Positions 38,290 to 58,681 are shown, numbered from the stretch's first letter. The stretch: 64,000 bases of DNA from IMGVR_UViG_3300023174_000045:62001-126000; one strand, 5' to 3'. Program-made: numbers and translations. Notes: generated by a model from the sequence alone, not told the origin.

Positions 38290-39290
38290 AAATAAACGAC
38301 ATTATCACAGAAAACTACAACGGCGAGTATGATGACGAAGCCGGCATGGTACAAGGCAACTTGTACACCATTGCCAAGGCAGCACAAGGCTTGCTGGACA
38401 CCATTGATGATCATGACAACTTGCCTGAGTGGGTGCAAGAAAAGATTGCCAAAGTAGAAGGCATGATGGTCACTGCATGGAATTACTTGCAGAGTCAAGA
38501 AGCACAGGGCATTGATCCCAAAATGTTTGAAGCTGCCAATGCCGCACAACAGGCTGCCATTGCCATCAACATGAAGAAGCATCACAAGAAGCCCAAGCAT
38601 GTAGACGAAAGTTCGGAGTTAGCAGAAGAGTTTGATCTCATTGAATCAATCATTGAACGCCTGGCCAAACACAATGGCGTTGATGCTGAAGTAATCTGGG
38701 CGGATTTAGAAACACTCACAGAAGATGAACTGTATGCTTTTGCTGTGACATCAGAGCCCATTATGGAATCACAAGACATGGCGGAAGGCTCACTAAACGA
38801 ACTCAGTAAAGATACTTTAAAATCTTATGCTAAAAAAGCAGTTCCTGATATGCAAACAAGTCAAAAAAGGTCAGAAATTGAGGCAGGAAAAGCAGCATCA
38901 ACAAAGGACGACAAAACTGCTAAAACGCATTACGATGCTGCAAAACAAGCCAGAGACAGAACAGAAAAAAGAATGGCCGGAATAAGTGGTGCTATTAAAA
39001 GAGTTACCAATCAAGGTATGGCGGAAGATTGGCAAAAGGCCAACAAGCGTGACAAAACAGATGGCATGAGCCGCAAAGCAGTCAACACCTATCGCAGAGA
39101 ACATCCTGGCAGCAAATTGCAAACTGCTGTGACCACCAAGCCCAGCAAGTTAAAGAAGGGCTCAAAGGCGTCAAAGCGTAGAAAAAGTTATTGCAGTCGC
39201 AGTCGTGGACAGATGAAAATGCACAGCATCAGTTGCGCTAAAACTCCTGACAAAGCCATATGCAAAGCACGACGTCGTTGGAACTGCTGA
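38286..39290 (+). CDS. modular putative internal virion protein
   Basis: MKINDIITE N-terminus; xxE linkers; basic C-terminal module ending ARRRWNC. Confidence 0.6.
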   Translation: MKINDIITENYNGEYDDEAGMVQGNLYTIAKAAQGLLDTIDDHDNLPEWVQEKIAKVEGMMVTAWNYLQSQEAQGIDPKMFEAANAAQQAAIAINMKKHHKKPKHVDESSELAEEFDLIESIIERLAKHNGVDAEVIWADLETLTEDELYAFAVTSEPIMESQDMAEGSLNELSKDTLKSYAKKAVPDMQTSQKRSEIEAGKAASTKDDKTAKTHYDAAKQARDRTEKRMAGISGAIKRVTNQGMAEDWQKANKRDKTDGMSRKAVNTYRREHPGSKLQTAVTTKPSKLKKGSKASKRRKSYCSRSRGQMKMHSISCAKTPDKAICKARRRWNC

Positions 39291-39550
39291 TGAGAATTGC
39301 ACTGTTATCATTGCTACTTGTTGGGTGTTCAACTGTGGTACCTGTCACACAGCGGTTTCCTGAAGCACCGGGCAACACGGCAATGACCGCTTGCCCACAA
39401 CTGCAAAAGGTTGCTGAAGATGCCCAACTCAGTGACATCTCAAAAACCATAACTGTAAACTATGGCACCTATTATGAGTGTGCTGTGAAAACAGATGCCT
39501 GGATTGAATGGTATCAAAAACAACAACAAATATTCAACAACATAAAATAA
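39290..39550 (+). CDS. lipoprotein, o-spanin (Rz1)-like candidate
   Basis: Lipobox LVGC; Pro/Cys-containing; adjacent to endolysin. Confidence 0.6.
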   Translation: MRIALLSLLLVGCSTVVPVTQRFPEAPGNTAMTACPQLQKVAEDAQLSDISKTITVNYGTYYECAVKTDAWIEWYQKQQQIFNNIK

Positions 39551-39560
39551 GGAGCCACCT

Positions 39561-40175
39561 ATGGAATTAACAATCAGTCAATTAAAACAAATGGTACCTG
39601 GCATACCCCATGCTGAGCATTGGTATGAAGCCTTGGACCAACTGTTGCCTGACTATGAAATCAACACACCCCATCGCATTGCTGCCTTCATAGCACAGTG
39701 CGCACATGAATCAGGCGGTTTTAAATTCATCAAAGAGAACTTGAACTACAAAGCAGAAAGTCTGCGCAAAATATTTGGCAAGTATTTTCCCACAGACGAA
39801 TTAGCACAGGCCTATGCCAAAAAACCTGAAATGATTGCCAACAGAATCTATGCCAACCGCATGGGCAATGGCGACGAACACTCTGGCGATGGATATCGCT
39901 ACTGTGGACGTGGACTTATCCAGTTAACTGGCCGGAGCAACTATGAAAACTTTGCTGCCAGTTTGGAAATCTCACCAGAAGAAGCTGCCGAATACTTGGC
40001 CACATTTGAAGGTGCCGCACAAAGCGCCTGCTGGTTCTGGGAAAGCAACAATCTAAATGCAGAAGCCGATGCTGGCGACATCAAGAAAATGACCAAGAAA
40101 ATCAATGGCGGTTTTATTGGATTAGAGGATCGTATCAAGCACTACGAACACGCATTACACATTATGGGAGCCTAA
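39561..40175 (+). CDS. GH19 endolysin
   Basis: RIAAFIAQCAHES, ENLNY, GRGLIQLTGR.NY, TKKINGG..GL.DR. Confidence 0.92.
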   Translation: MELTISQLKQMVPGIPHAEHWYEALDQLLPDYEINTPHRIAAFIAQCAHESGGFKFIKENLNYKAESLRKIFGKYFPTDELAQAYAKKPEMIANRIYANRMGNGDEHSGDGYRYCGRGLIQLTGRSNYENFAASLEISPEEAAEYLATFEGAAQSACWFWESNNLNAEADAGDIKKMTKKINGGFIGLEDRIKHYEHALHIMGA

Positions 40176-40176
40176 C

Positions 40177-40716
40177 ATGGCACAAGCAGAAACAAAACCC
40201 TTATCACGTTCAGAACGTGAAGCAGCAATCAAAGACAAAGCAGGCTTAGTGATTGTGATCATGGCCCTGTTCATGGCTGTGACAACTTACTTTTCAAACA
40301 GTTACTCAGGTGCTGTGCTGAAAAACATGCTCAAAGCCACAGACACCTATGCTTTTTATCAAAGCAAAAGTATCAAGCAAAGCATTGCTGAAGGACAACT
40401 GGAACAAACTCAAAACCCTCAACGCCGAGCAGAACTTGAAGCCAAGATTGCTCGCTACGAAAGTGACCCTGCCAAAGGCGAAGGCAAGAAAGAATTGTTG
40501 GCCAAGGCACAGGCCTACGAAGCCGCACGTGATGAGGCTACCCGTCATAGTCCATGGTTGACGTTTGCGTCATTGGCATTTCAACTGGCCATTGTGCTGT
40601 TGAGTGCCAGCATTTTGAGTGTGAACAACACCATGTACCGTATCAGTGAAGTGGTGGCTGTGATTGGCACAGTGTTGTTGAGCCAGGGCATCTGGTTATG
40701 GATACCAGGAGTATAA
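40177..40716 (+). CDS. membrane protein, DUF4337-like
   Basis: TM - YQSKSIKQ coiled region - two TMs. Confidence 0.6.
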   Translation: MAQAETKPLSRSEREAAIKDKAGLVIVIMALFMAVTTYFSNSYSGAVLKNMLKATDTYAFYQSKSIKQSIAEGQLEQTQNPQRRAELEAKIARYESDPAKGEGKKELLAKAQAYEAARDEATRHSPWLTFASLAFQLAIVLLSASILSVNNTMYRISEVVAVIGTVLLSQGIWLWIPGV

Positions 40717-42912: not shown

Positions 42913-43335
42913 ATGGCAGAACAACAACAACCAGAAAAGAAAGACGAAGATTGGATGCAGAAGAAATGGCGTCCAGCCATGGGATGGATGTACATGGGCA
43001 TCTGTACCTTGGACATGGCAGTGTTCCCAGTGCTGTGGTCAGTGTTGCAAGTGATTCAACACACCACGATCACTCAATGGCAACCACTCACACTGCAAGG
43101 CGCTGGCCTATTCCACGTGGCCATGGGTGCTGTGTTGGGTATTGCCGCATTTGGTCGCACACAAGAAAAGATTGCAGGGGCCGCACAAAACCCTGCACCC
43201 ACAGCATCAGGTACACCGTTGCCAGCACCGGCCCCAGTCCCTGTGGCGGCATCTGCACCAGCTGCGTCCACAGCAGTTACCACAGGCTTTGGCGGTAAGA
43301 AAGCACCACCTGAGCCTGCGTTCCCAGAAATCTAA
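42913..43335 (+). CDS. holin-like protein (GTA 3TM holin type)
   Basis: W..KWRPAMGW.Y ... LGIAAFGRTQEK. Confidence 0.7.
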   Translation: MAEQQQPEKKDEDWMQKKWRPAMGWMYMGICTLDMAVFPVLWSVLQVIQHTTITQWQPLTLQGAGLFHVAMGAVLGIAAFGRTQEKIAGAAQNPAPTASGTPLPAPAPVPVAASAPAASTAVTTGFGGKKAPPEPAFPEI

Positions 43336-43599: not shown

Positions 43600-44373
43600 A
43601 TGACCGACTACTACGCCACACTAGGTGTGCCCCGAACTGCCACTGCTGACGAAATCAAACGGGCATTTCGTCGATTGGCCAGCCAGCATCATCCGGACAA
43701 AGGCGGCGATACTCAAAAGTTTCAGGCCATTCAAGAAGCCTATGCCACACTGGGCGACGAACAAAAACGTGCCGAATACAACAATCCCAGGCCACAGTTT
43801 TCAGGATTCAATGGCAGTGTCAACATCAATGACATATTCAACATGTTTGGGCATGGACACGGGTTTGCTCAACAGCCACGGCCACGCAGTCATGTGAGAA
43901 TGACCTTGACCATTACATTGAATGACGTGGCCACAGGTGGCAAACGCACTGTGAGCCTGGGCACAGCACAAGGCATAAGTGCTGTGGAAATTGAAATACC
44001 CATAGGCATCAATGACGGAGACAATGTGCATTATGAAGGCATCGGTCCCGGTGGCTCAGATCTTGTGGTACAGTATCGAGTTCAACCAGACCGAGTTTGG
44101 CAACGTCAGGATCTCAATTTAATTACTGAAACACGAGTGAGCATTTGGGATATAATATTGGGAACCGAATTGCACATTACCACAATTACCGGCAGTGTTT
44201 TGAGTGCCAATATACCTCCCAGAAGTCAACCCGGTGTGACCTTGAGACTGCGAGGAAGAGGATTGACCAACCGAAATGGCAACACTGGTGACATCATGGT
44301 GCGAGTGCAGGCCTTTGTGCCAGATTCCGTCGCACCCGAATTGCTGGCAGCTATTCAAGCACACCACAAATAA
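43600..44373 (+). CDS. DnaJ/CbpA-type chaperone
   Basis: J domain (YYATLGV, HPDKGG, AY.TL) plus DnaJ_C; no zinc finger. Confidence 0.92.
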
Positions 44374-44449
44374 ATATTTTGGCACAGTCAAGGTTGCACC
44401 CAATAACAAAATAGCATATAATAAACCATAGGACAACTCAAGGACCCAC

Positions 44450-46702
44450 ATGCAAAACAATCCCGAAATTGAACACATTGTAGATCAAGCAGTGAAAATT
44501 GCTCGAGACAAACATCACGAATATGTCATAACTGAACACTTGTTGTTGAGTCTGATCAGGCATGCACCGTTCCGTAAAACCTTGGACAATTTTGGTGTGG
44601 AAGTTGATCAAATGGATCAAGAGGTTGATGTGTATCTTGACAGTTTGAAAAACTTGGTCAAGCCCGGTGAAGAAGTGCAACCACGCAAAACACAAACCTT
44701 GGAACGCCTGTTCAATCGTGCCAATGTGCAGGTCATGTTCACAGGACGCAGAACACTGACCACCTTGGATTTGTACTTGAGCATCATGGCCGAAACCAAC
44801 AGCCATGCACACTACTTCTTGCTGAAATATGGCGTGAAGAAAACTGAGTTTTCAGAATTCTACGGCAAAAATTATCATGCCGGTGAAACCAAAATGAATC
44901 CAGTGCAGGCCAACGAAATACTCACTGAGTACTGCACCAACTTGACAGCCTTGGCACAAGCAGACAAACTGGAACCCTTGATCGGGCGTCAAACAGAACT
45001 GCACGAAATGATCACTGTGATGGCTCGACGCTTCAAGGCCAATGTGCTCATGGTAGGCGATCCTGGCGTAGGCAAGACCTGCATTGTGGACGGCTTGGCA
45101 CAGGAAATTGTGGCTGGACGTGTGCCCAAGTTCATACAAAATCATGAAGTATGGGGACTAGAAGTTGGAAGTTTGCTGGCAGGATCAAAGTACCGCGGGG
45201 AGTTTGAAGAAAAATTCAAGGCTGTGATTGCTGCCTTGGAAACCAAAAAAAACTGTATCCTGTTCATTGACGAAGCACACACCATGAAAGGTGCCGGTGC
45301 CGGAAGCCAAAGTTCATTAGACTTTGCCAACATGCTAAAGCCTGCAATCACCAAAGGCAACTTGAAAGTGATTGCGTCAACAACATGGGAAGAGTATTAC
45401 GAATCATTCGAAAAGGATCGTGCGTTGATGCGCAGGTTCTATCGTATTTCAATTGATGAGCCAGATACAGAAACCACAGAAAAGATTCTCATTGGCCTAA
45501 GCCCAAGACTGGAAAAGTTCCATGATGTGCTAATTGACACAGAAGCAATGATGGCTGCTGTGGAACTGGCCAATCGCTACATACACGATCGTAAAAATCC
45601 TGACAAAGCCATTGACTTGTTGGATGCAAGTTGCGCACGTGAACGTGTGAAAGATCAAGGTACCATCACAGTCACCAAAGAAATGATTCAAGCACAGGTG
45701 TCACGTGTGGCAGGTGTGCCTGTGGATCGCTTGCAAAATGAACGATCGGCAAAGATTGTGGATTTGGAAAGCAATATCAAACAGAAGTTATACGGACAGG
45801 ATAGTGCTGTGGATGCGGTGTTAGAACGTGTGTACATCAACTTTGCCGGCATTGGCAATGCCCGACGTCCTATCTCAAGTTTCTTGTTCTTAGGCCCAAC
45901 AGGTACAGGTAAAACTGAACTGGCCAAACTGTTGAGTGACAACTTGGAAATGAAACTGTTGCGATATGACATGAGTGAGTATCAGGAAAAGCACACAGTA
46001 TCAAGCCTGATTGGTGCGCCTCCTGGTTATGTGGGCTTTGAAGATGGCAACATAGGCGGTGGTAAACTGATCAGTGACATCAGCAAGAATCCCTATGCTA
46101 TCATCTTGTTTGACGAGATTGAAAAAGCACACAGTGATGTCACCAACATCCTGTTGCAAATGCTGGACGAAGGACACATTACGTCAGCCAATGGCAAACG
46201 AGTAGACGTCAAGAACTGCATCATTATCATGACGTCCAACTTGGGGGCTCAAGCCAATGATGCCAACAACATTGGCTTTGGTAGCCTGGAAAAGACCGGT
46301 GAAGAAGATCGTGCCATGAAAGAGTTCTTCCGTCCAGAACTGCGCAATCGTATTGATCGTATCTGCAAGTTCAACAAACTAGACACATTGGCCATCAAGA
46401 AAATTGTGGTGAAGTTTGTGGATGAACTCAAAGCCAGCATGACTGACAAGAACATTCGTCTAGTATTGACTGAGCCTGTGATTGACCACTTGGCTGACAA
46501 AGGCTACGACAGCAAAATGGGCGCACGTCCTTTATCACGCAAGATCGACGAGTTGATCCGTGTTCCACTCAGCAAAAAGATCTTGTTTGATCGACTAGAA
46601 AACTGCGTGATCACAGCAGTGATGGCAACGGATGTTGTGGAATTTGAAATTGAACTAGACAAAGTGAGCACGGTAAATGCCGACGGAATCATTGTTGTAT
46701 AA
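44450..46702 (+). CDS. clpA: ATP-dependent Clp protease ATP-binding subunit (ClpA-like)
   Basis: Clp N domain; GDPGVGKT, LFIDEAH; GPTGTGKTE, DMSEYQEKH, GAPPGYVG, FRPE..NR, GARPL. Confidence 0.92.
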   Translation: MQNNPEIEHIVDQAVKIARDKHHEYVITEHLLLSLIRHAPFRKTLDNFGVEVDQMDQEVDVYLDSLKNLVKPGEEVQPRKTQTLERLFNRANVQVMFTGRRTLTTLDLYLSIMAETNSHAHYFLLKYGVKKTEFSEFYGKNYHAGETKMNPVQANEILTEYCTNLTALAQADKLEPLIGRQTELHEMITVMARRFKANVLMVGDPGVGKTCIVDGLAQEIVAGRVPKFIQNHEVWGLEVGSLLAGSKYRGEFEEKFKAVIAALETKKNCILFIDEAHTMKGAGAGSQSSLDFANMLKPAITKGNLKVIASTTWEEYYESFEKDRALMRRFYRISIDEPDTETTEKILIGLSPRLEKFHDVLIDTEAMMAAVELANRYIHDRKNPDKAIDLLDASCARERVKDQGTITVTKEMIQAQVSRVAGVPVDRLQNERSAKIVDLESNIKQKLYGQDSAVDAVLERVYINFAGIGNARRPISSFLFLGPTGTGKTELAKLLSDNLEMKLLRYDMSEYQEKHTVSSLIGAPPGYVGFEDGNIGGGKLISDISKNPYAIILFDEIEKAHSDVTNILLQMLDEGHITSANGKRVDVKNCIIIMTSNLGAQANDANNIGFGSLEKTGEEDRAMKEFFRPELRNRIDRICKFNKLDTLAIKKIVVKFVDELKASMTDKNIRLVLTEPVIDHLADKGYDSKMGARPLSRKIDELIRVPLSKKILFDRLENCVITAVMATDVVEFEIELDKVSTVNADGIIVV

Positions 46703-48371: not shown

Positions 48372-49418
48372 ATGAAACAAGTTGTTATTATGCCCGGTGG
48401 CTTTCACCCTTTTCACGCAGGACACGCTGAGTTATATCAATCAGCGAAAAAAGCCTTTCCTGGCGCTGACGTGTATGTGGCTGCTACCAACGACACCAGC
48501 AACAGACCTTTCCCCTTTGCACTGAAAGAAAAACTGGCACAGTTGGCCGGAATCCCTGCAGGCCGATTTGTACAAGTCAAGTCACCGTTTGGTGCAGAAG
48601 AAATAACCAGCCGATACGATCCAGAAACCACACAGTTGATCTTTGTCAAGAGTGAAAAAAACAGCCGATCAGGTCCCAGCCCCGAAGGTCCTTTTCCAGC
48701 AGAGCCTGATCCTGCAACAGGCCAATTGCCCTTGGTCACTAGAGGAGCCAGAAAAGGCTTGCCTGTGAGTGATCGATTACAATATTATCAACCAGGTCAG
48801 CCAATGGCGCCCATGAGTCAACACTCTTATCTTGCTTATTTGCCCACTGTGGAATTTGGCCCTGGTATGACATCAGGGTCCGAAATACGCACAGCATGGC
48901 CAAAATTAAATGAAAAACGTAAAACTGCGCTGATAATGAGCTTGTATCCAAAGACACAAGCCAACCCCAAGTTAGCCGCCAATGTTGTGCAAATGCTGGA
49001 CAATGCCATGGGCACAGTGGACGAAGACATCAGCCGCAGAGGATTTTTACGTGGTGCAGGTGCTGCCGCTGGCATGGCTGCCGCAGGCGCTGTGGGTGCA
49101 AAAGAACTTGCCCGGCCAACAATCATAGCCATTGTACGAATTGGCGATCAGACAAAACAATTCAACCTTGGTACTAAATTTGATACTTCAAAACAAGCAG
49201 AAGATTTTGTTGCCAATTTTCTAGACAAACAAGGCATACAAGGATACACCATTGAAATACAACGTGGTTATACCAACGAAAATCAAGGCTGGGCTGCCAC
49301 ATATGAAGCAGACGGACTCACTGCCGGAACCGGTGTCACAGGTGGCATGCATGCCACATACCAAGATCGATACAATCAACCCACTACAGAAGACTATGTG
49401 GAAGAACGTCGGTCGTAA
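48372..49418 (+). CDS. cytidylyltransferase-like (HxGH) protein with C-terminal modules including an internal Tat-like signal
   Basis: MPGGFHPFHAGH, TSGSEIR; VDE-DISRRGFLRG. Confidence 0.7.
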   Translation: MKQVVIMPGGFHPFHAGHAELYQSAKKAFPGADVYVAATNDTSNRPFPFALKEKLAQLAGIPAGRFVQVKSPFGAEEITSRYDPETTQLIFVKSEKNSRSGPSPEGPFPAEPDPATGQLPLVTRGARKGLPVSDRLQYYQPGQPMAPMSQHSYLAYLPTVEFGPGMTSGSEIRTAWPKLNEKRKTALIMSLYPKTQANPKLAANVVQMLDNAMGTVDEDISRRGFLRGAGAAAGMAAAGAVGAKELARPTIIAIVRIGDQTKQFNLGTKFDTSKQAEDFVANFLDKQGIQGYTIEIQRGYTNENQGWAATYEADGLTAGTGVTGGMHATYQDRYNQPTTEDYVEERRS

Positions 49419-50405: not shown

Positions 50406-53400
50406 ATGAATATTCATGAGTTGGACTCTTACAATCTTGGCGACGCAGTAAAGTTTCACCGCCGTCTCAATCCCAGAATCTGGGGGCGAGACGAGCATTT
50501 ACTGCCAGAAGTGCGCAACAAACTGCTGGCCATTGCCGCAGACTTTCAAGAATTCTTGGGTGTTGATAATCTCAACGTTGAAGATATCACCATATCAGGC
50601 TCCAACGCAGCCTACTCCTACACAAAAAACTCAGACATTGATCTACACCTTGTTGTAGCAATGCCCGACAATCCTGTGTATCAGGAATTGTTTAATGCTA
50701 AAAAATATCAATACAACGACGAGCACAACATAAAAATTGGCGGTGCTGATGTGGAATTGTATGTGCAACCTGCGGATCAAGCACACCACAGTCAAGGCAT
50801 TTACTCAATCAAAGATTCGGAATGGCGTCAGATACCACAACGCAAACGTGCGCAGATAGATGATTCTTGTGTGCGTGACAAAACAGCTGACTTGGATGCT
50901 AGAATACACGCCGCAATCAAAAGTCGAAATTTAGAATCCATTAGCACACTGTGGGACAAGATCAAAGCCATGCGCAAAAGCGGACTTGAACAGCACGGTG
51001 AATTTGGTTGCGAAAATATCTCTTTCAAACTGTTGCGCAACAAGGGCTGTATTGGTGCGCTAAAAGATGCAATGATGTCCGAAAAAGATCGTGAACTCAG
51101 TTTGCGTGAAGCACCTGCAACGCCATTTCGTTATGGCTATGGTTCTGAAGTTGACGAAGCCAGTTTGGCAGACATGCGAGCTGCCTTTGCCGCAGATGCC
51201 AAACCACAAAAACAAGAAGTATTTCACAGTCATGATGAATACGAAAAAGTTCGAAAACAACGCGAAGCTGAACGCGAAGAAAAAATCAAACAAATAGCAA
51301 GAAAACCAATGAAGCCGTGGTCGGGAGGCTTGGAAGAAGGCCATCAAGGTCAACCTTACAGTAGTGAAGATGGTGTTGCTGCCAGTACCAAAATGTTCTG
51401 TGAAGACAATGATGACACCCTGGTACACGACTTTATTCAACACACTGCCATGGAACTGGGCATTGATCCCATGCCCGAAATTGTGTTGCACACTGATCCT
51501 GAATGGAGCACCAACAATCACAGTTTTGGCCGCTATGACCCCGAAAGCCACACACTCAACGTCAGCATGCCCAATCGTCACATCCTGGATGTGTTGCGTA
51601 CTGTGGCACATGAACTGGTACACTGCTCACAAAATCAACAGCATGGCAACTTGCCTCCAAATGCAGGCGAAACTGGTAGTCGCTGGGAAAATGATGCCAA
51701 TGCCCGAGCTGGCATAATCATGCGTGACTGGGCCAACACACATCCTGAACACTTTGAATTGCCCCCACTGGACGAAAGTGCGTCAGGATACATTCCTAAA
51801 AATAAAAAAGAAGCAGCCATGCCACAGTATGCCATGGCCTTGAGCGTGGATATCAAGCCAGGACAGACTGGCAAAGAAGCCAACAAGCTGGCATTGCAAA
51901 CAGGCCGCAATGGCGAGCCAGGCTTGTTGATGAAAACTGTGAACTTGCGTGAGTATAAGATGCCACAGCCCAGTCAAGGTCCTGGACGATATAGAGACTT
52001 GAATGAACCACTGGGTCCAGAGACTCCGCCCGAAATGCCAGATGGCACAATCAAAGTAGATGTATCGGACATGTACGACTGGTACAAACTGGGTCAAAAG
52101 ATATCAGACTTAGGCAGTATCAAACCTGGTGAACTAGGGTCAGGTCCTCCAAGTACAGTGTTTGCATTTGGCTCAGAAGATTTAGAAAACATGTACAGTC
52201 ATGAACTCACAAAACTGGGTTTAAAAACACACGACTTGGATGAGCCTGGCGAAGAAGACATTGACGAGAGTGCAAGCGATTACCAAATACACAACACTGA
52301 GAAACTGGATCGTGTGCTGGCCAAGTGTTGTGCTATGATTGAGCGAGGGCAACAAACGGATCCTGAGCGTTACGGTATGGTTGCTGCCTGTGTGATTGAT
52401 CCTGACAATAAACAGGTGTACGGCATCAACTTACCCGGCACTGATGGCACACGCAGACATGCTGAACGTGTGGCCATCAACAAGTACCGCAAGCAGCACG
52501 GTGACATTCCTAAAGGCAGCATTGTGGTCACGACACTGAGTCCCTGCAATAGCCCCATGGATGAACGTGCAGGCGAGAGTTGCAAAGACTTACTAAACAG
52601 TGCGGGCATACACAAAGTGTATTGTGGTTACATTGACCCCACACAGCACGATGATGAGGATGCTGACTTTGTTACAGGTGTCACACAAAATGACGACTTG
52701 TGGGACAGTTGCAAAGCATTTGCCGACACATTCTTACATGAAGATGACTTAGAAGAAGGAATAAAGTCTGCATTGGCCACTGCGGCTTTGGCAGGAACAA
52801 TGGCCATGGGGGCTCAAGCAAAAGCACCAACTATGGTTCAACAAATCGTCGAGCCTGGTGATACAATTTACAGCATAGCAAGACAAACTGGTGCAGATCC
52901 CAAAGAGATATACAAACTCAACAAGATGGATCGTAATACCAAGCTAGAGATAGGACAAAAGGTTCTGGTACCCGATTATGCTAGGCCTATTAGTAAAATG
53001 CCTGCCTCTGTAACACCCACAGTCAAACAAGAACCTGTAAAAGTGGCACCTCCTGCACCAACATTAAAAGATAAAATCTCATCAATGCTACCTAAATTTC
53101 CAGATGATGACGAAGGTGTTGTATTATTGAGCGACAATCCTGACGCAGAAGCCGCGCTACAAACTGCTGCCAAAGCCGCAGGACTTAAAGGTTCTGAACT
53201 GGCACAGTTCATGGCACAGACCCGACACGAAAGTGCAAACTTTGCACACATGAAAGAAATTGGCACTAAGAAAAAATTTGATCATTATGAAAAAAATCGT
53301 ACTCTAGCAAGACGATTAGGCAATACAGTCAAAGGTGATGGAGAAAGATTTAAAGGCCGTGGGTTCATTCAGTTGACCGGACGTGACAACTATACCAGAG

Positions 53401-53630
53401 CCAGCCAACAAATCTTTGGCGATGACCGACTGGTAAGAAATCCTGACTTGGCCAGCAAGTTGGATGTGGCAGCAAAAGTTGCACTGTGGTATTGGAAAAA
53501 TCAAGTTAGGCCCAAAGTCAATGATTTTAACAATACCACACAAGTTGTCAAAGCAATCAATGCTGACGAACCAATGAATGTTGTAAAACAACGTCACAAC
53601 AAATTCAAAGAATATTTGGCGGTGTTATGA
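50406..53630 (+). CDS. five-enzyme mosaic protein: nucleotidyltransferase, zincin, deaminase, LysM, GH19
   Basis: GSNA...SDIDLH; AHELVH..E; HAE...TLSPC...C; VEPGDTIYSIA...L.IGQKVLVP; FMAQT.HES...GRGFIQLTGRDNY. Confidence 0.85.
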   Translation: MNIHELDSYNLGDAVKFHRRLNPRIWGRDEHLLPEVRNKLLAIAADFQEFLGVDNLNVEDITISGSNAAYSYTKNSDIDLHLVVAMPDNPVYQELFNAKKYQYNDEHNIKIGGADVELYVQPADQAHHSQGIYSIKDSEWRQIPQRKRAQIDDSCVRDKTADLDARIHAAIKSRNLESISTLWDKIKAMRKSGLEQHGEFGCENISFKLLRNKGCIGALKDAMMSEKDRELSLREAPATPFRYGYGSEVDEASLADMRAAFAADAKPQKQEVFHSHDEYEKVRKQREAEREEKIKQIARKPMKPWSGGLEEGHQGQPYSSEDGVAASTKMFCEDNDDTLVHDFIQHTAMELGIDPMPEIVLHTDPEWSTNNHSFGRYDPESHTLNVSMPNRHILDVLRTVAHELVHCSQNQQHGNLPPNAGETGSRWENDANARAGIIMRDWANTHPEHFELPPLDESASGYIPKNKKEAAMPQYAMALSVDIKPGQTGKEANKLALQTGRNGEPGLLMKTVNLREYKMPQPSQGPGRYRDLNEPLGPETPPEMPDGTIKVDVSDMYDWYKLGQKISDLGSIKPGELGSGPPSTVFAFGSEDLENMYSHELTKLGLKTHDLDEPGEEDIDESASDYQIHNTEKLDRVLAKCCAMIERGQQTDPERYGMVAACVIDPDNKQVYGINLPGTDGTRRHAERVAINKYRKQHGDIPKGSIVVTTLSPCNSPMDERAGESCKDLLNSAGIHKVYCGYIDPTQHDDEDADFVTGVTQNDDLWDSCKAFADTFLHEDDLEEGIKSALATAALAGTMAMGAQAKAPTMVQQIVEPGDTIYSIARQTGADPKEIYKLNKMDRNTKLEIGQKVLVPDYARPISKMPASVTPTVKQEPVKVAPPAPTLKDKISSMLPKFPDDDEGVVLLSDNPDAEAALQTAAKAAGLKGSELAQFMAQTRHESANFAHMKEIGTKKKFDHYEKNRTLARRLGNTVKGDGERFKGRGFIQLTGRDNYTRASQQIFGDDRLVRNPDLASKLDVAAKVALWYWKNQVRPKVNDFNNTTQVVKAINADEPMNVVKQRHNKFKEYLAVL

Positions 53631-54934
53631 GAGCACATGAATTTCTATACAAAAAACCTCTTGATGAAGATGTTGAGAATTTTCCCATTGCCAACGTGCG
53701 CAGACCCAACGGTGCCATTGGTAACCAAGGTGTCAACACCGAACAAGCAGCAGATGTGTTGACTCATGCTGCCGGCATGCAGGTATCGCCAGACATGACC
53801 ATGCGTCAAATGGTGGATGCACTACGAGCAGATCCTGCGGCACAACAACGACTGAGACAATTTGTACAACAAAACCCTGTGACAGTGTATGCACTGCCAG
53901 ATGGTTCATATCATTTGCAAGATGGACATCACAGAACATTTTTGCTGAACTTGCTGGGTGATGAAACAGTGCCAGCCATAGTCAAAGAAGATGTCAAGGA
54001 AGCCAACACTGTGGAGTTTGAAGGGTTGACTTTGAAAGTAATCAAAAGCGGACATGAGTTAGTAGTTGATGCCCTTGATGACTGGGGTAACAAGGTACTA
54101 GGACATGTACGATTCAACATAGGCGACAACAAAGAATTGGATCCGCAAGATCTCTCTGTGGATGAGAAATATCAAGGCCAAGGTATTGCCCGTGTCATGT
54201 ATGATTATATCAAAAGCCAGGGCTATACCATTGTTAGAAGTTGGGATCAAACTGATGCAGGCGCAGGCTTTTGGAACAAGCATCGCGGAGAAGATGTTCG
54301 AGTTTGGGAAACCTTTGACAACCCTTACAAGGGCACGTGGGAAAAAAGCGATTATGGTGACGTTGATCTAAACACAAAATTACCAGACGGCACATATCTC
54401 AACATCATGTTCAATCAAGAATATGACGGAGAAGGCGACGAAGTCGTTCAAGTTGAATTCCACAGAAACAACAGCCAAGAAGTCACGGGCGAGGGCGATG
54501 CACAGCGTATCTTTGCCACAGTGTTGGATGCTATACAAAAATACATTAAAAAATACAAACCCGAAAGACTAAGTTTCTCAGCAAGCAAATCAGTGGACAT
54601 GGACGCAGACGATGTTGAACACTTCAATCCAGAAAGCCGTGCCAAGTTATACACCAGACTGGTACAACGATATGCTGGCACCTGGGGTTATCAGGCTCAG
54701 GTCAGCGACGAAGGCGATGTGGTTATATATCAACTGACTAGAACCATAGCAGAAAACTTTGCAGACGGTAAAAATCCCGGCCGCAAAGGACTCAGTAAGC
54801 GCATGGGTGTGAACACCAAGGCCAGTGTTAGTAGTTTGCGCAACACAGCCAAACATTCATCAGGTGAGAAACAACGCATGGCCCACTGGCTGGCCAACAT
54901 GAAAGCTGGTAGAGCAAAGGCACGAAGAAAATGA
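53627..54934 (+). CDS. mosaic protein: ParB-like, GNAT, unknown domain, basic C-terminal module
   Basis: LQDGHHR; VDEKYQGQGIA..MY..QT.AG..FW. Confidence 0.75.
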   Translation: MRAHEFLYKKPLDEDVENFPIANVRRPNGAIGNQGVNTEQAADVLTHAAGMQVSPDMTMRQMVDALRADPAAQQRLRQFVQQNPVTVYALPDGSYHLQDGHHRTFLLNLLGDETVPAIVKEDVKEANTVEFEGLTLKVIKSGHELVVDALDDWGNKVLGHVRFNIGDNKELDPQDLSVDEKYQGQGIARVMYDYIKSQGYTIVRSWDQTDAGAGFWNKHRGEDVRVWETFDNPYKGTWEKSDYGDVDLNTKLPDGTYLNIMFNQEYDGEGDEVVQVEFHRNNSQEVTGEGDAQRIFATVLDAIQKYIKKYKPERLSFSASKSVDMDADDVEHFNPESRAKLYTRLVQRYAGTWGYQAQVSDEGDVVIYQLTRTIAENFADGKNPGRKGLSKRMGVNTKASVSSLRNTAKHSSGEKQRMAHWLANMKAGRAKARRK

Positions 54935-56094
54935 AAATACGACAAATTGTAGAAGCCGCTGAACGTGGCAAAACACTGGGCGGATTCCCCATCAAAGTAT
55001 TGCATGTGGAACACGGTGCCACAGACGAAGCACTCAAACTGGATGCACCACAACAGTCTTGGAGCAACCAAGACATGCAAGACTACTTGAGTCGTGTTAA
55101 AACTGGTACCAAGACCAAAGCCGACAAGTTCCGACCCATCATACACGGCAGCAATGTCAAAGCCATTACCAAAGATGACGGTGGTACAGAATGGGATTTG
55201 GATGATTTAAAAAGTCAGATCATGCAGCCGCCAAGACAGATCTTGGGTACCAATGCCAAAATGGCCAAGAGCAAACAAGAAGGCGCCATCACATATGACC
55301 TAACACTGCCGGCATTGAGTGGCATTGTGGTGGATGAAGACACAGGCGAATTTGTGGAAGTGATAACCTGCCCTGGTGCTGGCGAGTGCCAAACCTACTG
55401 CTATGCTAGAAAAGGTGGTTATGTGATGTTCCCAGCCAGTTCAATGAGTGCGGCACAGGCCTTGAACTTCTTGGTCAACCACCCTTCGGACTACATGGAG
55501 AAGTTTGACGGCGAAGTCAAAAAAGCCGCTGCATTAGCCAGCAAAAACGGCATCAAGTTGTTGGTGCGCATACATGATGCTGGCGACTTCTTCTCCAAAG
55601 AATACTACAATCTCATGATGGATGTGGCCAAGAACAATCCAGATGTAAAGTTCTATTTCTACACCAAGATGGGACAAATAGTAACAGACCCTGACACACC
55701 CGACAACGTGGTCAAACAGTTCTCACCTGGCGCCAAGAGTCGTGAAGTCAAAACAGTTCAACTGCAACGTGATGCTGGCAAACATGTCAAAGACGCGGTG
55801 ACATTGCCCAAGGACATGTTCCGTGATTTGTTTGTGACAGATGCCAAGGGCAAGTATGTCAAGGACGAAAAGGGACGTACACAGGTTCGCAGTCCCCAGG
55901 CGTGGCAACAGTTCCGTCAAGAACTGGGCGCAAAATACAACATTGACCCCGACACTGTGATCACATACGATGAAATGAACCGCATACCCGAAGGCCCTGC
56001 ACCCAAATGGAACGTTGTAGTGTTTCCTGCAGGGCATGGAGACCTAGGCGCCAGCAGACTGGACGTGGCAAACCAATTCTTGATGTTCCACTAA
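54931..56094 (+). CDS. GP88-like Cys-cluster protein
   Basis: N.KM, LPA, TCPGAGECQTYCYA.KG, RIHDAGDF, YFYTK. Confidence 0.7.
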   Translation: MKIRQIVEAAERGKTLGGFPIKVLHVEHGATDEALKLDAPQQSWSNQDMQDYLSRVKTGTKTKADKFRPIIHGSNVKAITKDDGGTEWDLDDLKSQIMQPPRQILGTNAKMAKSKQEGAITYDLTLPALSGIVVDEDTGEFVEVITCPGAGECQTYCYARKGGYVMFPASSMSAAQALNFLVNHPSDYMEKFDGEVKKAAALASKNGIKLLVRIHDAGDFFSKEYYNLMMDVAKNNPDVKFYFYTKMGQIVTDPDTPDNVVKQFSPGAKSREVKTVQLQRDAGKHVKDAVTLPKDMFRDLFVTDAKGKYVKDEKGRTQVRSPQAWQQFRQELGAKYNIDPDTVITYDEMNRIPEGPAPKWNVVVFPAGHGDLGASRLDVANQFLMFH

Positions 56095-56104
56095 ATATAT
56101 TATC

Positions 56105-57229
56105 ATGAATTTATACGACCTGTTCAACGAAGAAAAAGTGCGCCTTGACCCCAAGTGCTGGAAGGGCAAAAAGATTGGCAATCCCAAGACCAAGATGAAG
56201 GGCGGCGTGCGTGTAAACAACTGTGTGCCTGCTGAGAGCATAGCAGAAAATGCCGGGCAACCACTCACAGTTCAACAATTGGCCGCCATCAGTGATGAGG
56301 CCTTGGATCAAGCATATGGGTATGGACGTAGTACACCCAGCAACAACTTTGGCTGGCAAGCCAATTTGAAGTCAGCTGCCTATGCCAAGCAAATGATTGA
56401 TCAGGGTGTGACAGACATTGAAGCCATCAGTGATGCTATTCACAAAGGATGGAACACTACTGCACAGGCATTTGTACAAGATCCTGAACAGTTTGATGAC
56501 ACAGCAAAACTGGCAGCAGCCGGCAAACTAGAAGCCAAACTTCAACAGCGAGCACAGTTGATGAAACAAAATTATGCTCAGTTACCTGAAGAAGAAAAAG
56601 AAAAAGACCGTGTGGTTGCACGAGCACTGTTACAGGCCATTCGTGGATCACAACAACCAGATGTGGCAGAAGGCGTGATGTACGGTGCAGAAAACTTGCA
56701 CGTAGGCGACGATGTGATCATTAGTGGCGATGTCAATCTCAAAGGTGCCACTGGCGTGATTGACAGCTTTGGCCAAGACAAACGTTTTGTTGTTGTCAAC
56801 CTGTACAATCATGGCAAGCACAGTTTCCACTCTAGTGATGTCAGCATCAACGACCATGATAATGATGAACACGATGACGATGTACTGGATGAAAAGTCTG
56901 TGAGCCAAGCACAGTTCCGTACCATGGCAGCGGCTGCACACAATCCCAAGTTTGCCAAGAAAGTTGGCATCAGTCAAGATGTTGCCAAAGAGTTTCACTC
57001 AGCAGACAAGCACAGCAATTACAAAAAGTTACCAGATCGTACCACTGAAGGCGAGCAACAAAAGGGTGCAGACTATCGTGACCCTAAGGAAGTTGACTAC
57101 GATGACGAATACGATGCCATGGTTGCCAGAGTTAAAAAGTTAGCCGGACTGGGCCCTATGCGAACTGTGTACGATCCCGCCAAGCGACAATATCGCAACA
57201 TGCCCACAGCAGTGCAGCCTAAAAAATGA
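56105..57229 (+). CDS. mosaic protein with RyR-like and KOW-like modules
   Basis: CWKG...NCVP module; AIHKGW...YAQLPEEEKEKDR; VGDDVIISG..KGATGVI. Confidence 0.65.
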   Translation: MNLYDLFNEEKVRLDPKCWKGKKIGNPKTKMKGGVRVNNCVPAESIAENAGQPLTVQQLAAISDEALDQAYGYGRSTPSNNFGWQANLKSAAYAKQMIDQGVTDIEAISDAIHKGWNTTAQAFVQDPEQFDDTAKLAAAGKLEAKLQQRAQLMKQNYAQLPEEEKEKDRVVARALLQAIRGSQQPDVAEGVMYGAENLHVGDDVIISGDVNLKGATGVIDSFGQDKRFVVVNLYNHGKHSFHSSDVSINDHDNDEHDDDVLDEKSVSQAQFRTMAAAAHNPKFAKKVGISQDVAKEFHSADKHSNYKKLPDRTTEGEQQKGADYRDPKEVDYDDEYDAMVARVKKLAGLGPMRTVYDPAKRQYRNMPTAVQPKK

Positions 57230-57723
57230 GAGCCCAAGAGTTTGTTGCTGAAGGCAAACAACCTGGAAAGCCAGTGGTTGATGCCATACAGAAAGTATTA
57301 CCCATGGCACAAGAAATATGGTTTCATGGTAGTCGTGCCACAGGTCGGCATCGTAGAAATAGCGACACTGACATCTTGGTGGTTGTGCCTGACAACCTTG
57401 TGGGTGATCAGTATCTTGCGGTGGTAAGAATACTACAAAAACTTGCTTCTCACTTTGACAACTATGACATACAGCCTACCAAGTCAGGCACTAACATACA
57501 TCGTATAGCACAAGAAGAAGGTCGATTGTTATGGTCCAGCAAGCTAGGTGTGGCAGAAGAACAACTAGACGAACTCAGTTTCCTAGGATCAGAATGCACC
57601 AAAGACTGTTCAGGACATCGCGCTGGATATGAGTGGTCAAAACGCAAGGGCCTGCGTCAAGCCAACAGCCTGTACAGTCCCAGTTTCAACAAAGGTGCCG
57701 CCTTGGCAGTGGCCGGCAAATAG
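57226..57723 (+). CDS. minimal nucleotidyltransferase (MNT-like) with a Cys module
   Basis: IWFHGSRATG...SDTDILVV...DI; CTKDCSGHRAGY.W. Confidence 0.75.
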   Translation: MRAQEFVAEGKQPGKPVVDAIQKVLPMAQEIWFHGSRATGRHRRNSDTDILVVVPDNLVGDQYLAVVRILQKLASHFDNYDIQPTKSGTNIHRIAQEEGRLLWSSKLGVAEEQLDELSFLGSECTKDCSGHRAGYEWSKRKGLRQANSLYSPSFNKGAALAVAGK

Positions 57724-58070: not shown

Positions 58071-58275
58071 AATTGTGGAATCAGCGTCAGCAGGCGCCTC
58101 AGCCGCAGGTGGCATTGCACCTGTGAGCATGCCCATGGGCGTGGTGTCAAGATCTGGAGGTTCCATGTTGTCAGGTAAATATGTAACTGGATCAGATCCT
58201 ACGCCTAACACGCCCAAGGAATACAAAAGGAATAAAAATGCTCGCGGACAGTTTAAAAACTCTATTAGCAACTGA
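58057..58275 (+). CDS. small putative internal virion protein
   Basis: MRASEIVE-SASAGASAAGGIA. Confidence 0.65.
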   Translation: MRASEIVESASAGASAAGGIAPVSMPMGVVSRSGGSMLSGKYVTGSDPTPNTPKEYKRNKNARGQFKNSISN

Positions 58276-58681
58276 ATATGCTTTCAGTATCAAGGCTCAG
58301 TTATTTCACTGGAACGTGGAAGGCCCTGATTTCGCTCAACTGCATGAGTTTTTTGGCAACCTGTATGAAGAGGTCTACGACGGTTCGATAGACAAAACCG
58401 CAGAATACATACGTGCCATGGGCGACTACGCACCTGGCAGCTTTGAACGTTTTGCTGAACTCAGCATCATTCAAGGACAAACAAAAATCCCACGAGCCAG
58501 ACTCATGATCGAAGAACTGCTGGCCAACAATGGTCAGCTGTTGGAACTACTCAACGAGAATTTCGCCATTGCCGAACAAGAAAATCAACAAGGCATTGCT
58601 AACTTTATTGCAGAACGCATTGATGCACATCAGAAACATGCATGGATGCTGAGAAGTTTCCTGAAAGACAATAGAGCATGA
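58238..58681 (+). CDS. dps: Dps/ferritin-like protein
   Basis: HWNVEGPDF.QLHEFF..LYE...D..AE.IR...H.KHAWML. Confidence 0.93.
   Translation: MLADSLKTLLATEYAFSIKAQLFHWNVEGPDFAQLHEFFGNLYEEVYDGSIDKTAEYIRAMGDYAPGSFERFAELSIIQGQTKIPRARLMIEELLANNGQLLELLNENFAIAEQENQQGIANFIAERIDAHQKHAWMLRSFLKDNRA

What the first reader, a model, noticed from the sequence alone, without database searches (positions are those of the whole stretch)
52749..53630. Cryptic internal Sec-type signal peptide ahead of a LysM-GH19 muramidase module
Seen: LEE|GIKSALATAALAGTMAMGAQA|KAP has a basic residue, a hydrophobic core and an A-x-A signal peptidase site. It sits at residue ~785, immediately after an xxE linker and immediately before LysM, a Pro-rich linker and a GH19 domain. 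Peptidoglycan-acting domains need periplasmic access, whereas the upstream domains look cytoplasmic. Inference: a second, independent example of a signal unmasked by processing, which supports the polyprotein model and implies the products are sorted to different compartments.
Basis: partly seen in the sequence, partly recalled or inferred. Interest (0 to 1): 0.8.

Follow-up and report, generated by a model that had tools for sequence, protein, structure and literature searches.

The report
Hidden export signal inside phage polyprotein
A giant phage's 1,074-residue multi-enzyme protein carries, at residue 785, what looks like a genuine bacterial export signal, placed just behind a protease-type cut site and ahead of a cell-wall-cutting enzyme, so the phage probably cuts the protein into pieces and lets the host's export machinery move some of them to the periplasm.

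Summary
ORF 50406-53630 (+) encodes 1,074 aa. Residues 782-805 read LEE|GIKSALATAALAGTMAMGAQA|K, followed by LysM, a Pro-rich linker and a GH19 domain with both catalytic Glu.

It is not chance. Every non-truncated relative with the LysM anchor (107 of 111) has this Ala/Gly-rich segment directly behind a (L/I/V)-(D/E)-E site, whatever lies upstream. Some relatives have a twin-arginine (Tat) signal there instead, scoring above the curated TIGR01409 cut-off. The window's neighbour gene (49026-49100) has one too. Some relatives carry two signal-bearing modules, or a cytoplasmic deaminase between two of them, which only works if the modules are cut apart before export. AlphaFold gives a lone low-confidence helix, not part of a folded domain.

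Context:
- Five consecutive genes start with leaders like the T4 capsid-targeting sequence MKTYQEFIAE|A.
- Homology breakpoints coincide with h-x-E sites.
- The phage has a separate holin/endolysin/spanin cassette.
- Its closest cultured relative, PA5oct, has a T4 gp21-type prohead protease.

Best reading: this is a capsid-targeted polyvalent polyprotein, cut at h-x-E sites to expose Sec/Tat signals, probably after ejection into the next host. Cleavage, packaging and export are inferred, not shown. The protease was not found on this contig.

The parts
50406..53630 (+). One ORF of 1,074 aa: a mosaic 'polyvalent' polyprotein (NTase-like / small zincin / unknown module / deaminase / signal-LysM-GH19)
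   Evidence: more than 1,400 mosaic relatives in metagenomes
50406..51104 (+). N-terminal nucleotidyltransferase-like module (residues 1-233), starting MNIHEL (a degenerate CTS-like start shared with stand-alone relatives)
   Evidence: phrog_36119 E=3e-41; stand-alone homologues in cyanophages and Maribacter phages; their N-termini
51150..51158 (+). VDE251 junction site (h-x-E)
   Evidence: HSP ends cluster at 245-260
51330..51338 (+). LEE311 junction site
51408..51755 (+). Small zincin-type metallopeptidase module (HELVH at 51609-51623)
   Evidence: invariant H-E-x-x-H in A2; AlphaFold pLDDT above 90 in the core; weak fold matches to abylysin, selecase, jannalysin and IrrE
51768..51776 (+). 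LDE457 junction site
   Evidence: HSP ends at 456-462
52236..52268 (+). LDE613 and IDE621 double junction site
   Evidence: HSP ends at 612 and 621-635
52305..52628 (+). dCMP/cytidine deaminase zinc-binding module (residues 634-741)
   Evidence: PF00383 E=4.6e-10, above cut-off
52749..52757 (+). LEE784: the h-x-E site directly ahead of the signal (inferred cut after E784)
   Evidence: 69 HSP starts at 773-787; P1 Glu at least 90% conserved
52758..52820 (+). Sec-type signal-like segment GIKSALATAALAGTMAMGAQA (K787 n-region, Ala/Gly-rich h-region, AQA805 c-region)
52848..52973 (+). LysM peptidoglycan-binding domain (815-856)
   Evidence: PF01476 E=4.5e-10; AlphaFold pLDDT about 90
52974..53183 (+). 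Pro-rich, low-confidence linker (857-926)
   Evidence: pLDDT below 50
53184..53627 (+). GH19 catalytic domain; Glu942 (53229-53231) and Glu951 (53256-53258) invariant
   Evidence: PF00182; solved GH19 phage endolysins hit; invariant E173/E182 of A1
49017..49100 (+). Neighbour gene 48372-49418: VDE218 followed by an internal twin-arginine signal DISRRGFLRGAGAAAGMAAAGAVGA
   Evidence: TIGR01409 22.4 bits against cut-off 16.7, with the match starting at the residue after the site; Pfam TAT_signal weak; sequence
53627..53668 (+). CTS-like leader MRAHEFLYKKPLDE of the next gene (ParB-like/GNAT protein, 53627-54934)
   Evidence: compare T4 IPII/IPIII MKTYQEFIAE
54931..54954 (+). CTS-like leader MKIRQIVE of gene 54931-56094
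56105..56131 (+). CTS-like leader MNLYDLFNE of gene 56105-57229
57226..57252 (+). CTS-like leader MRAQEFVAE of gene 57226-57723 (Pol-beta type NTase)
39260..40175 (+). Separate lysis genes: Rz-like spanin lipoprotein (39260-39550) and a signal-less GH19 endolysin (39561-40175)
   Evidence: phrog_456 and phrog_181 E=5e-78
42913..43335 (+). Holin-like gene
   Evidence: phrog_3427 E=4e-8

Best explanation
Residues 785-805 are a genuine Sec-type export signal. They open a self-contained module (signal + LysM + GH19 peptidoglycan hydrolase).

The module is one cassette of a mosaic 'polyvalent' polyprotein. Its cassettes (nucleotidyltransferase-like, small zincin, unknown module, deaminase, hydrolase) are separated by (L/I/V)-(D/E/S)-Glu sites, the kind cut by T4 gp21-family prohead proteases. 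The protein belongs to a cluster of genes with N-terminal leaders like the T4 capsid-targeting sequence.

Proposed sequence of events:
1. The precursor is made in the cytoplasm. Its signal is buried in the chain behind an acidic flank, so it is not exported.
2. It is taken into the prohead.
3. The prohead protease (or, less likely, the built-in zincin) cuts after E784 and at the other sites.
4. [quoted passage not shown]
5. There the piece that now starts at G785 is taken by SecA/SecYEG, cut by signal peptidase after AQA805, and the LysM-GH19 enzyme ends up in the periplasm. The enzyme modules without a signal stay in the cytoplasm.

Shown: the sequence features, their conservation, the Sec/Tat interchange, the modular breakpoints, and the separate lysis cassette.
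Inferred: every cleavage, the packaging, the ejection and the export.
For: (1) The segment is conserved in kind, not in sequence. It has K/R, then 13-20 uncharged Ala/Gly-rich residues, then A-x-A/G, in every non-truncated relative with the LysM anchor (107 of 111), down to 40% identity.

(2) It is interchangeable with Tat signals.
- P0231 has IDRRGFLRGLGAAALAGVGGQALA|KAP in front of LysM-GH19.
- P0036, P0003, P0012, P0013, P0046 and P0081 have S/T-R-R-x-F-L/V signals after h-x-E.
- Four of the six Tat-type fragments tested pass the curated TIGR01409 cut-off, with the match starting at the first or second residue after the site.
- The small domain behind the window's own Tat signal (48372-49418) is homologous to a domain that sits behind a Sec-type signal in P0214.

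(3) Topology argument. P0214 and P0036 have two signal modules in tandem. P0003 has a deaminase between a Tat module and the Sec-LysM-GH19 module. Uncut, these would put the hydrolase on the wrong side of the membrane.

(4) The six [LIV][DES]E sites of the query (251, 311, 457, 613, 621, 784) all lie between domains. Four locations (251, 457, 613/621, 784) coincide with strong clusters of homology breakpoints; 311 has little such support.

(5) Leaders.
- T4 IPII/IPIII start MKTYQEFIAE|A. The first 10 residues target the capsid and are removed by gp21 (PMC9026906).
- Related loci start MRA[YRSTN]EFI[TV]E|A/D.
- In the window, five consecutive genes (50406-57723) plus 38286 match the leader pattern, 6 of 125 ORFs in all.
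- Even the stand-alone 305-aa form starts MRFREFTPKKDVDE|GWKS, never with the signal itself. It occupies the syntenic position in L278.

(6) The closest cultured phage is PA5oct (clamp loader 52% identical). Its gp152 is a PF03420 (T4 gp21 family) head maturation protease. Its virion protein gp150, detected by mass spectrometry, starts MKINDIITE|G, as does window ORF 38286.

(7) No conserved start codon lies upstream of the signal, so internal initiation cannot expose it.

(8) In AlphaFold, residues 770-805 have pLDDT below 50 and form a lone helix, while LysM and GH19 score above 90.

(9) The 11 residues up to P1 carry a mean net charge of -3.6. This fits masking of the signal until the cut is made.

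(10) The phage has a separate signal-less endolysin, a spanin and a holin. It also has an ordinary N-terminal signal on another periplasmic enzyme. The masked arrangement is therefore special to this cluster.
Against: - No protein-level data exist for this uncultivated phage. Cleavage at E784 or A805, virion association and export are all inferred.
- A gp21-family protease was not found in the window, in four related loci, or in 10 kb upstream. I could not reach the rest of the 225-kb contig.
- The query's own N-terminus (MNIHEL) is a weak CTS match and is shared with stand-alone NTase-like proteins of other phages.
- The h-region is weakly hydrophobic (KD 1.45). The conserved G-W-K-D-W start in distant relatives is unusual for a signal n-region.
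- No signal-peptide predictor was available.
- A peptidoglycan hydrolase exported early in a new infection has no obvious benefit.
- The built-in zincin could be the processing enzyme instead.
Confidence: 0.55

Rival explanations
1. Same signal and same polyprotein, but processing and export happen in the producing cell. The built-in zincin or another cytoplasmic protease cuts at the h-x-E sites, and the LysM-GH19 piece is exported late in infection as an auxiliary, secreted lysis enzyme. Nothing is packaged.
For: A zincin-like module with an invariant HExxH is present in about half of the retrieved relatives. Iyer et al. 2017 propose such peptidase domains as the processing enzyme of polyvalent proteins (PMC5512222). 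Secreted endolysins exist (own knowledge: Lys44 of phage fOg44). No prohead protease was found near the gene.
Against: Many leader-bearing proteins with h-x-E sites and signals have no zincin: the 305-aa stand-alone form and the 348-aa neighbour. The leaders resemble the T4 capsid-targeting sequence, and the site specificity is that of gp21-type proteases. The phage already has a complete holin/endolysin/spanin set. A stand-alone secreted enzyme would not need a 14-residue leader ahead of its signal.
Confidence: 0.2
2. The segment is a membrane-insertion ('fusion-peptide-like') N-terminus of an ejection protein. After prohead cleavage, the Gly/Ala-rich end inserts into the inner membrane from the periplasmic side during ejection. 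This anchors the hydrolase at the entry site, without Sec or signal peptidase.
For: The composition is Ala/Gly-rich with small-xxx-small spacing, and the conserved W-K-D-W could sit at a membrane interface. Virion-borne peptidoglycan hydrolases that act during entry are well known (own knowledge: T7 gp16, T4 gp5). Capsid targeting and h-x-E sites fit equally well.
Against: In some relatives the same position is occupied by twin-arginine signals that pass a curated Tat model. Small residues at -3 and -1, with a variable -2, recur before the mature domain. Both features matter only for recognition from the cytoplasmic side, by Tat/Sec and signal peptidase.
Confidence: 0.1
3. There is no upstream cleavage. 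The segment is an internal signal-anchor of a bitopic membrane protein, with about 785 cytoplasmic residues and a periplasmic LysM-GH19 that is possibly released by signal peptidase.
For: Internal signal-anchors with large cytoplasmic N-domains are common in bacteria. N-terminal extensions do not always block Tat or Sec signals (own knowledge). No cleavage has been observed.
Against: Architectures with two signal modules in tandem, or with a deaminase between two signal modules, give impossible topologies if uncut. An h-x-E site always lies 1-9 residues before the signal. The hydrophobicity is too low for a stable anchor. Stand-alone forms still carry a leader plus a site.
Confidence: 0.1
4. 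The segment has no targeting role. It is a structural helix, a low-complexity linker, or an assembly or gene-fusion artefact.
For: It is Ala/Gly-rich and only weakly hydrophobic. Metagenome assemblies can contain chimeras.
Against: The same fusion type is seen in hundreds of independent assemblies from JGI, ENA and Logan. AlphaFold does not pack it into a domain. Its n-h-c organisation and its Sec/Tat interchange are conserved.
Confidence: 0.03

Closest known systems
T4 internal proteins IPI-III and Alt with their capsid-targeting sequence (CTS), cut by prohead protease gp21
   Same: A short N-terminal leader of the same kind (T4 MKTYQEFIAE|A; here MRAxEFITE|A and variants). The cut is after Glu with an aliphatic residue at P3. 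The cargo is diverse and fast-evolving, and the genes lie side by side.
   Different: Here several unrelated enzyme modules hang on one leader and are separated by further sites, and some modules begin with Sec or Tat signals. T4 internal proteins have neither feature, to my knowledge. Packaging was not shown here.
Polyvalent proteins of phages and conjugative elements (Iyer, Burroughs, Anand, de Souza, Aravind 2017, PMC5512222)
   Same: Many unrelated effector-type domains in one polypeptide, a zincin-like peptidase domain, and highly variable architectures. The paper also proposes that the domains have different subcellular targets and are separated by proteolysis after delivery.
   Different: That paper never uses the terms signal peptide, transmembrane, LysM or chitinase. 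Here the junctions carry a defined h-x-E motif and explicit Sec/Tat signals. No MuF-type packaging domain was seen; a T4-like leader is present instead.
Ejection or inner-body proteins of giant phages (phiKZ, 201phi2-1, SPN3US) processed by gp175/gp245-type prohead proteases
   Same: Head-internal proteins are cut after Glu in a three-residue motif, with multiple sites per precursor, and are ejected into the host (PMC5694885).
   Different: Those phages use the motif S/A/G-x-E or A-x-E, and they belong to a different phage lineage. No export signals have been reported for them.
Secreted and SAR endolysins (own knowledge: Lys44 of fOg44; P1 Lyz, phage 21 R)
   Same: A peptidoglycan hydrolase that reaches the periplasm through the host Sec system. 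SAR domains have the same Gly/Ala-rich, weakly hydrophobic composition.
   Different: Their signals sit at the true N-terminus, and they are the phage's lysis enzyme. Here the signal is internal or behind a leader, an A-x-A site is conserved, Tat variants exist, and a separate canonical endolysin is present.
Virion-associated peptidoglycan hydrolases (own knowledge: T7 gp16, T4 gp5, phiKZ gp181)
   Same: A second, non-lysis wall hydrolase carried by the particle.
   Different: Those enzymes act from outside during penetration and need no export signal.
Polyproteins of eukaryotic RNA viruses with internal signal sequences (own knowledge: flaviviruses)
   Same: A viral protease and host signal peptidase cooperate to send parts of one precursor to different sides of a membrane.
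   Different: Those work co-translationally at the ER. There is no homology. To my knowledge, nothing comparable has been described for tailed phages.

Membership tests
Sec-type (signal peptidase I) signal peptide | Located at the N-terminus of the species that is exported | tested here: not met
   In the primary product it starts at residue 785. Stand-alone forms still have a 14-18-residue leader. The feature is met only after the inferred cut at E784.
Sec-type (signal peptidase I) signal peptide | Basic n-region, uncharged hydrophobic h-region, c-region with small residues at -3 and -1 | tested here: met
   K787; ALATAALAGTMAMG; AQA805. The same layout occurs in 99 distinct junction strings. 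The h-region is weak (KD 1.45). The regex forced small residues at -3 and -1, but searches show them without it.
Sec-type (signal peptidase I) signal peptide | SecA-dependent export and cleavage by signal peptidase | not testable with these tools
   No predictor or experiment was available.
Twin-arginine (Tat) signal (neighbour gene and relatives) | S/T-R-R-x-F-L-K motif plus h-region, scoring above the curated model cut-off | tested here: met
   TIGR01409 scores: window 49026.. 22.4 bits, P0003 21.2, P0036 17.5, P0231 17.1, against cut-off 16.7. P0012 scored 15.9 and P0081 had no hit.
T4-type capsid-targeted internal head protein | N-terminal propeptide of about 10-20 residues resembling the CTS and ending in an h-x-E site | tested here: inconclusive
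   Strong for the neighbours and relatives (MRAHEF...LDE|, MRAQEFVAE|, MRAxEFITE|) against T4 MKTYQEFIAE|. The query's own MNIHE|L is weak and is shared with stand-alone NTase-like proteins.
T4-type capsid-targeted internal head protein | A gp21-family (PF03420) prohead protease in the same genome | tested here: inconclusive
   Absent from the window, from L002-L005 and from 10 kb upstream. About 160 kb of the contig is unseen. The nearest cultured relative, PA5oct, has one.
T4-type capsid-targeted internal head protein | Presence of the processed protein in virions | not testable with these tools
   The phage is uncultivated. The only evidence is indirect: PA5oct virion protein gp150 shares the leader MKINDIITE.
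Polyvalent protein (Iyer et al. 2017) | Several unrelated effector or enzyme domains in one phage polypeptide, with architectures that vary between relatives | tested here: met
   NTase-like, zincin, deaminase and LysM-GH19 here. Relatives swap in Amidoligase_2, GNAT, NUDIX and ParB.
Polyvalent protein (Iyer et al. 2017) | Zincin-like metallopeptidase domain | tested here: inconclusive
   Invariant HExxH and a confident model. Fold matches to minigluzincins and IrrE are weak (best E=3e-3, TM 0.42-0.58). There is no sequence hit.
GH19 phage peptidoglycan hydrolase | GH19 fold with the two catalytic Glu | tested here: met
   PF00182 40.9 bits against cut-off 25.5. Solved GH19 endolysins are hit. 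E942 and E951 are invariant. Bond specificity (muramidase or other) was not tested.
SAR endolysin | N-terminal, uncleaved, weakly hydrophobic anchor on the phage's lysis enzyme | tested here: not met
   Only the composition fits. The segment is not N-terminal, a conserved A-x-A site is present, Tat variants exist, and the phage has a separate endolysin with holin and spanin.

The most novel reading that the evidence does not exclude
A clade of PA5oct-related giant phages packs 'pre-proteins' into the capsid. The prohead protease cuts polyvalent precursors so that some pieces acquire a free Sec or Tat signal. After ejection, the host's own translocases carry these pieces (a peptidoglycan hydrolase and several unknown small domains) into the periplasm within minutes of infection, with no phage gene expression needed. 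The other pieces act in the cytoplasm. This would be a new delivery route for phage effectors to the cell envelope.
Probability: 0.35. Interest if true: 0.9.

Novelty: new variant of a known kind. Interest (0 to 1): 0.72.

Why it matters
Capsid-internal and polyvalent phage proteins are thought of as cytoplasmic weapons injected with the DNA. Export signals hidden behind protease sites would mean that one precursor supplies effectors to both the cytoplasm and the periplasm, with a protease cut serving as the sorting switch. That has not been described for tailed phages.

It also turns an open question (how the domains of polyvalent proteins reach different targets) into something testable with simple reporter fusions and virion N-terminomics.

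In practice, the (L/I/V)-(D/E)-E plus signal grammar gives a way to split hundreds of unannotated giant-phage polyproteins into modules, and to pick out those aimed at the cell envelope.

Tried and rejected
- **Internal translation start.** No ATG/GTG/TTG is conserved upstream of the signal. The Leu codon at 790 is TTG, CTA or TTA in relatives. The only ATGs lie inside the h-region. Rejected.
- **Assembly or fusion artefact.** Rejected: there are hundreds of independent assemblies.
- **Structural helix.** Rejected by AlphaFold.
- **This module as the phage's lysis endolysin.** Rejected: a separate cassette exists.
- **Near-identical or full-length relatives among 50,697 cultured phage records.** None were found. 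Only single domains match.
- **Finding the prohead protease or major capsid protein on the same contig.** All attempts failed:
  - T4 head proteins and a PF03420 profile against the window and loci found nothing.
  - The PA5oct capsid protein in IMG/VR gave 151 relatives, but not our contigs among the 80 shown.
  - The module alignment in IMG/VR was swamped by generic GH19 hits.
  - PA5oct protease against the protein database gave more than 8,000 relatives, none on a contig of matching length among the 120 shown.
  - One 10-kb walk to the left found no head genes.
- **Host clue from species genomes.** No relative was found.
- **Protein-language-model atlas.** It returned only generic LysM/GH19 clusters.
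- **Sequence search of the zincin module against solved structures.** Nothing significant.
- **Not used.** Sequencing-run and read-laying tools were not used, because the architecture is already replicated across assemblies.


Full report
**What is there.** They are the last 294 codons of a single uninterrupted ORF, 50406-53630 (+), 1,074 aa. Family scans give these parts:
- a nucleotidyltransferase-like module at 1-233 (phrog_36119, E=3e-41);
- an HExxH module around 335-450;
- a dCMP/cytidine deaminase at 634-741;
- LysM at 815-856;
- GH19 at 927-1074.

The last three score above Pfam's curated cut-offs. Solved GH19 phage endolysins are hit, and both catalytic Glu (942, 951) are invariant in 41 diverse relatives. 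LEE is 782-784. GIKSALATAALAGTMAMGAQA is 785-805.

**Is it more than chance?** The protein has more than 1,400 relatives in public metagenomes, on contigs up to 360 kb, and none among 50,697 cultured phage records beyond single domains. Of the 240 sequences retrieved, 111 carry the LysM anchor. All of those not truncated by a gene call (107) show an Ala/Gly-rich, uncharged stretch of 13-20 residues. It follows a K/R, ends in A-x-A/G, and comes directly after an aliphatic-(D/E/S)-Glu site. The sequence further upstream belongs to many unrelated modules: deaminase, Amidoligase_2, zincin, unknown domains, or just a short leader.
- Over more distant relatives the letters change (VAGAALGAAALGAQA, KAAGLALGALSLGAQA, GIAGAAIATGAMGAQA) but the layout does not. 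This is how signal peptides evolve.
- AlphaFold, run on an alignment of the module, gives pLDDT below 50 and a lone helix for 770-805, while LysM and GH19 score above 90.

**Is it an export signal?** Three results bear on this.
- In some relatives the same position holds a twin-arginine signal instead. P0231 has IDRRGFLRGLGAAALAGVGGQALA|KAP ahead of LysM-GH19. P0036, P0003, P0012, P0013, P0046 and P0081 have S/T-R-R-x-F-L/V segments after an h-x-E site.
- The curated NCBIfam model TIGR01409 scores four of the six Tat-type fragments tested above its cut-off. Among them is the window's own neighbour gene (49026-49100: 22.4 bits against 16.7). Each match begins at the first or second residue after the presumed cut.
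- The small domain behind the window's Tat signal is homologous to one that sits behind a Sec-type signal in P0214 (46% identity, pairwise E=1e-12).

Two different cargo domains thus each appear with either kind of signal. This is hard to explain unless both are export signals read from the cytoplasmic side.

**Must the chain be cut first?**
- P0214 and P0036 carry two signal-bearing modules in tandem.
- P0003 has a deaminase between a Tat module and the Sec-LysM-GH19 module.
- If uncut, the second signal would cross the membrane in the wrong direction and leave the wall hydrolase in the cytoplasm.
- No start codon is conserved upstream of the signal, so internal initiation cannot expose it.
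- The six [LIV][DES]E sites of the query (251, 311, 457, 613, 621, 784) all lie between domains. Four locations (251, 457, 613/621, 784) coincide with strong clusters of homology breakpoints against 239 relatives, for example 69 alignment starts at 773-787. Site 311 has little such support.
- The 11 residues up to P1 are strongly acidic (mean net charge -3.6). I infer that this would blunt the signal until the cut is made.

**Which protease, and where?**
- The five consecutive genes 50406-57723, plus ORF 38286, begin with M-(R/K/N)-x-x-(E/D/Q)-(F/I/L/V). That is 6 of 125 ORFs in the window.
- In related loci the leader is MRA[YRSTN]EFI[TV]E followed by A or D, repeated on adjacent unrelated genes.
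- T4 IPII and IPIII begin MKTYQEFIAE|A. These ten residues are the capsid-targeting sequence, removed by prohead protease gp21 (PMC9026906). T4-type and giant-phage prohead proteases all cut after Glu in a three-residue motif (PMC5694885).
- Even the stand-alone 305-aa form of the module starts with a leader plus VDE (MRFREFTPKKDVDE|GWKS), never with the signal itself.
- In the syntenic scaffold L278 that stand-alone gene sits where the window has the 1,074-aa fusion.
- The closest cultured phage is the jumbo myovirus PA5oct (clamp loader 52% identical). It has a PF03420 (gp21 family) head maturation protease. Its virion protein gp150, detected by mass spectrometry, starts MKINDIITE|G, identical over nine residues to window ORF 38286.

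I therefore think the precursors are taken into proheads and cut there. The exposed signals could then act only after ejection into the next host.

This step is inference. I did not find the protease in the window, in related loci or in 10 kb upstream, and I could not reach the rest of the contig.

The HExxH module folds like small zincins, though the matches are weak. It is an alternative processing enzyme, as proposed in general for polyvalent proteins (PMC5512222).

**Context that bears on function.**
- The phage has its own spanin lipoprotein (39260-39550), a signal-less GH19 endolysin (39561-40175; phrog_181, E=5e-78) and a holin-like gene (42913-43335). The LysM-GH19 module is therefore a second wall hydrolase.
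- The phage also encodes a DD-carboxypeptidase-like protein with an ordinary, strongly hydrophobic N-terminal signal (3067-3879). The masked, weakly hydrophobic signals (KD 1.2-1.45 against 2.3) are thus peculiar to the leader-bearing cluster. I infer that low hydrophobicity would also keep the nascent precursor away from co-translational membrane targeting.
- What a few exported hydrolase molecules would do early in infection is unknown.

**Comparison with what is known.** The parts are known: T4 capsid-targeting leaders, Glu-specific prohead proteases, polyvalent proteins, secreted and SAR endolysins, and virion-borne wall hydrolases. The combination is not.
- The polyvalent-protein paper never uses the terms signal peptide or transmembrane.
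- A 2026 preprint on envelope proteins of huge phages deals only with N-terminal signals.
- Literature searches for ejection proteins with signals found nothing pertinent.

I rate the finding a new variant of a known kind.

Noticed in passing
window 48372-49418 (signal at 49026-49100): A cytidylyltransferase-like protein carries an internal twin-arginine signal directly after TVDE. It passes the TIGR01409 cut-off (22.4 against 16.7 bits). The roughly 65-residue domain behind it has no family, but it recurs behind a Sec-type signal in P0214.
   Followed up: yes
window 39260-40175 and 42913-43335: A canonical lysis set: Rz-like spanin lipoprotein, signal-less GH19 endolysin and a holin-like gene. 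A DUF4337 membrane protein lies at 40177-40716.
   Followed up: partly
window 3067-3879: A phage-borne Peptidase_S11 / beta-lactamase-fold (DD-carboxypeptidase-like) protein with an ordinary, strongly hydrophobic N-terminal signal.
   Followed up: partly
window 59613-63056: A 1,147-aa ORF with no family hit. It has a central Gly/Ala-rich hydrophobic stretch (about residues 558-590) similar in composition to the masked signals.
   Followed up: no
window 19763-21043 (+), opposite 19558-21318 (-): A 426-aa ORF made of hydrophobic repeats lies antisense to a tail-fibre gene. It is most likely the mirror image of the fibre's repeats and not a gene. Similar antisense ORFs lie at 21993-23570.
   Followed up: no
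window 43600-46702 and 58238-58681; L282 1382-1966: The phage carries DnaJ, a ClpB-like ATPase and a Dps/ferritin-like protein, plus ClpP just left of the window. That amounts to a small proteostasis kit.
   Followed up: no
window 54870-54934; P0208, L092, L093: The basic C-terminal tail of gene 53627-54934 (…MAHWLANMKAGRAKARRK) recurs in other phages as the module immediately upstream of the signal-LysM-GH19 cassette. This is another sign of cassette shuffling.
   Followed up: partly
L281 301-420 (Synechococcus phage DSL-LC02): The stand-alone NTase-like homologue in a T4-like cyanophage starts MNLQEFV, which also resembles the T4 capsid-targeting sequence. This enzyme family may be head-internal in cultured T4-like phages.
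   Followed up: no
L009 24619-25134 (PA5oct gp173): The virion-detected lysozyme of PA5oct has a Gly/Ala-rich N-terminal segment (…LIAMGLSGAIALGGALLAP…) resembling a SAR or signal domain.
   Followed up: no
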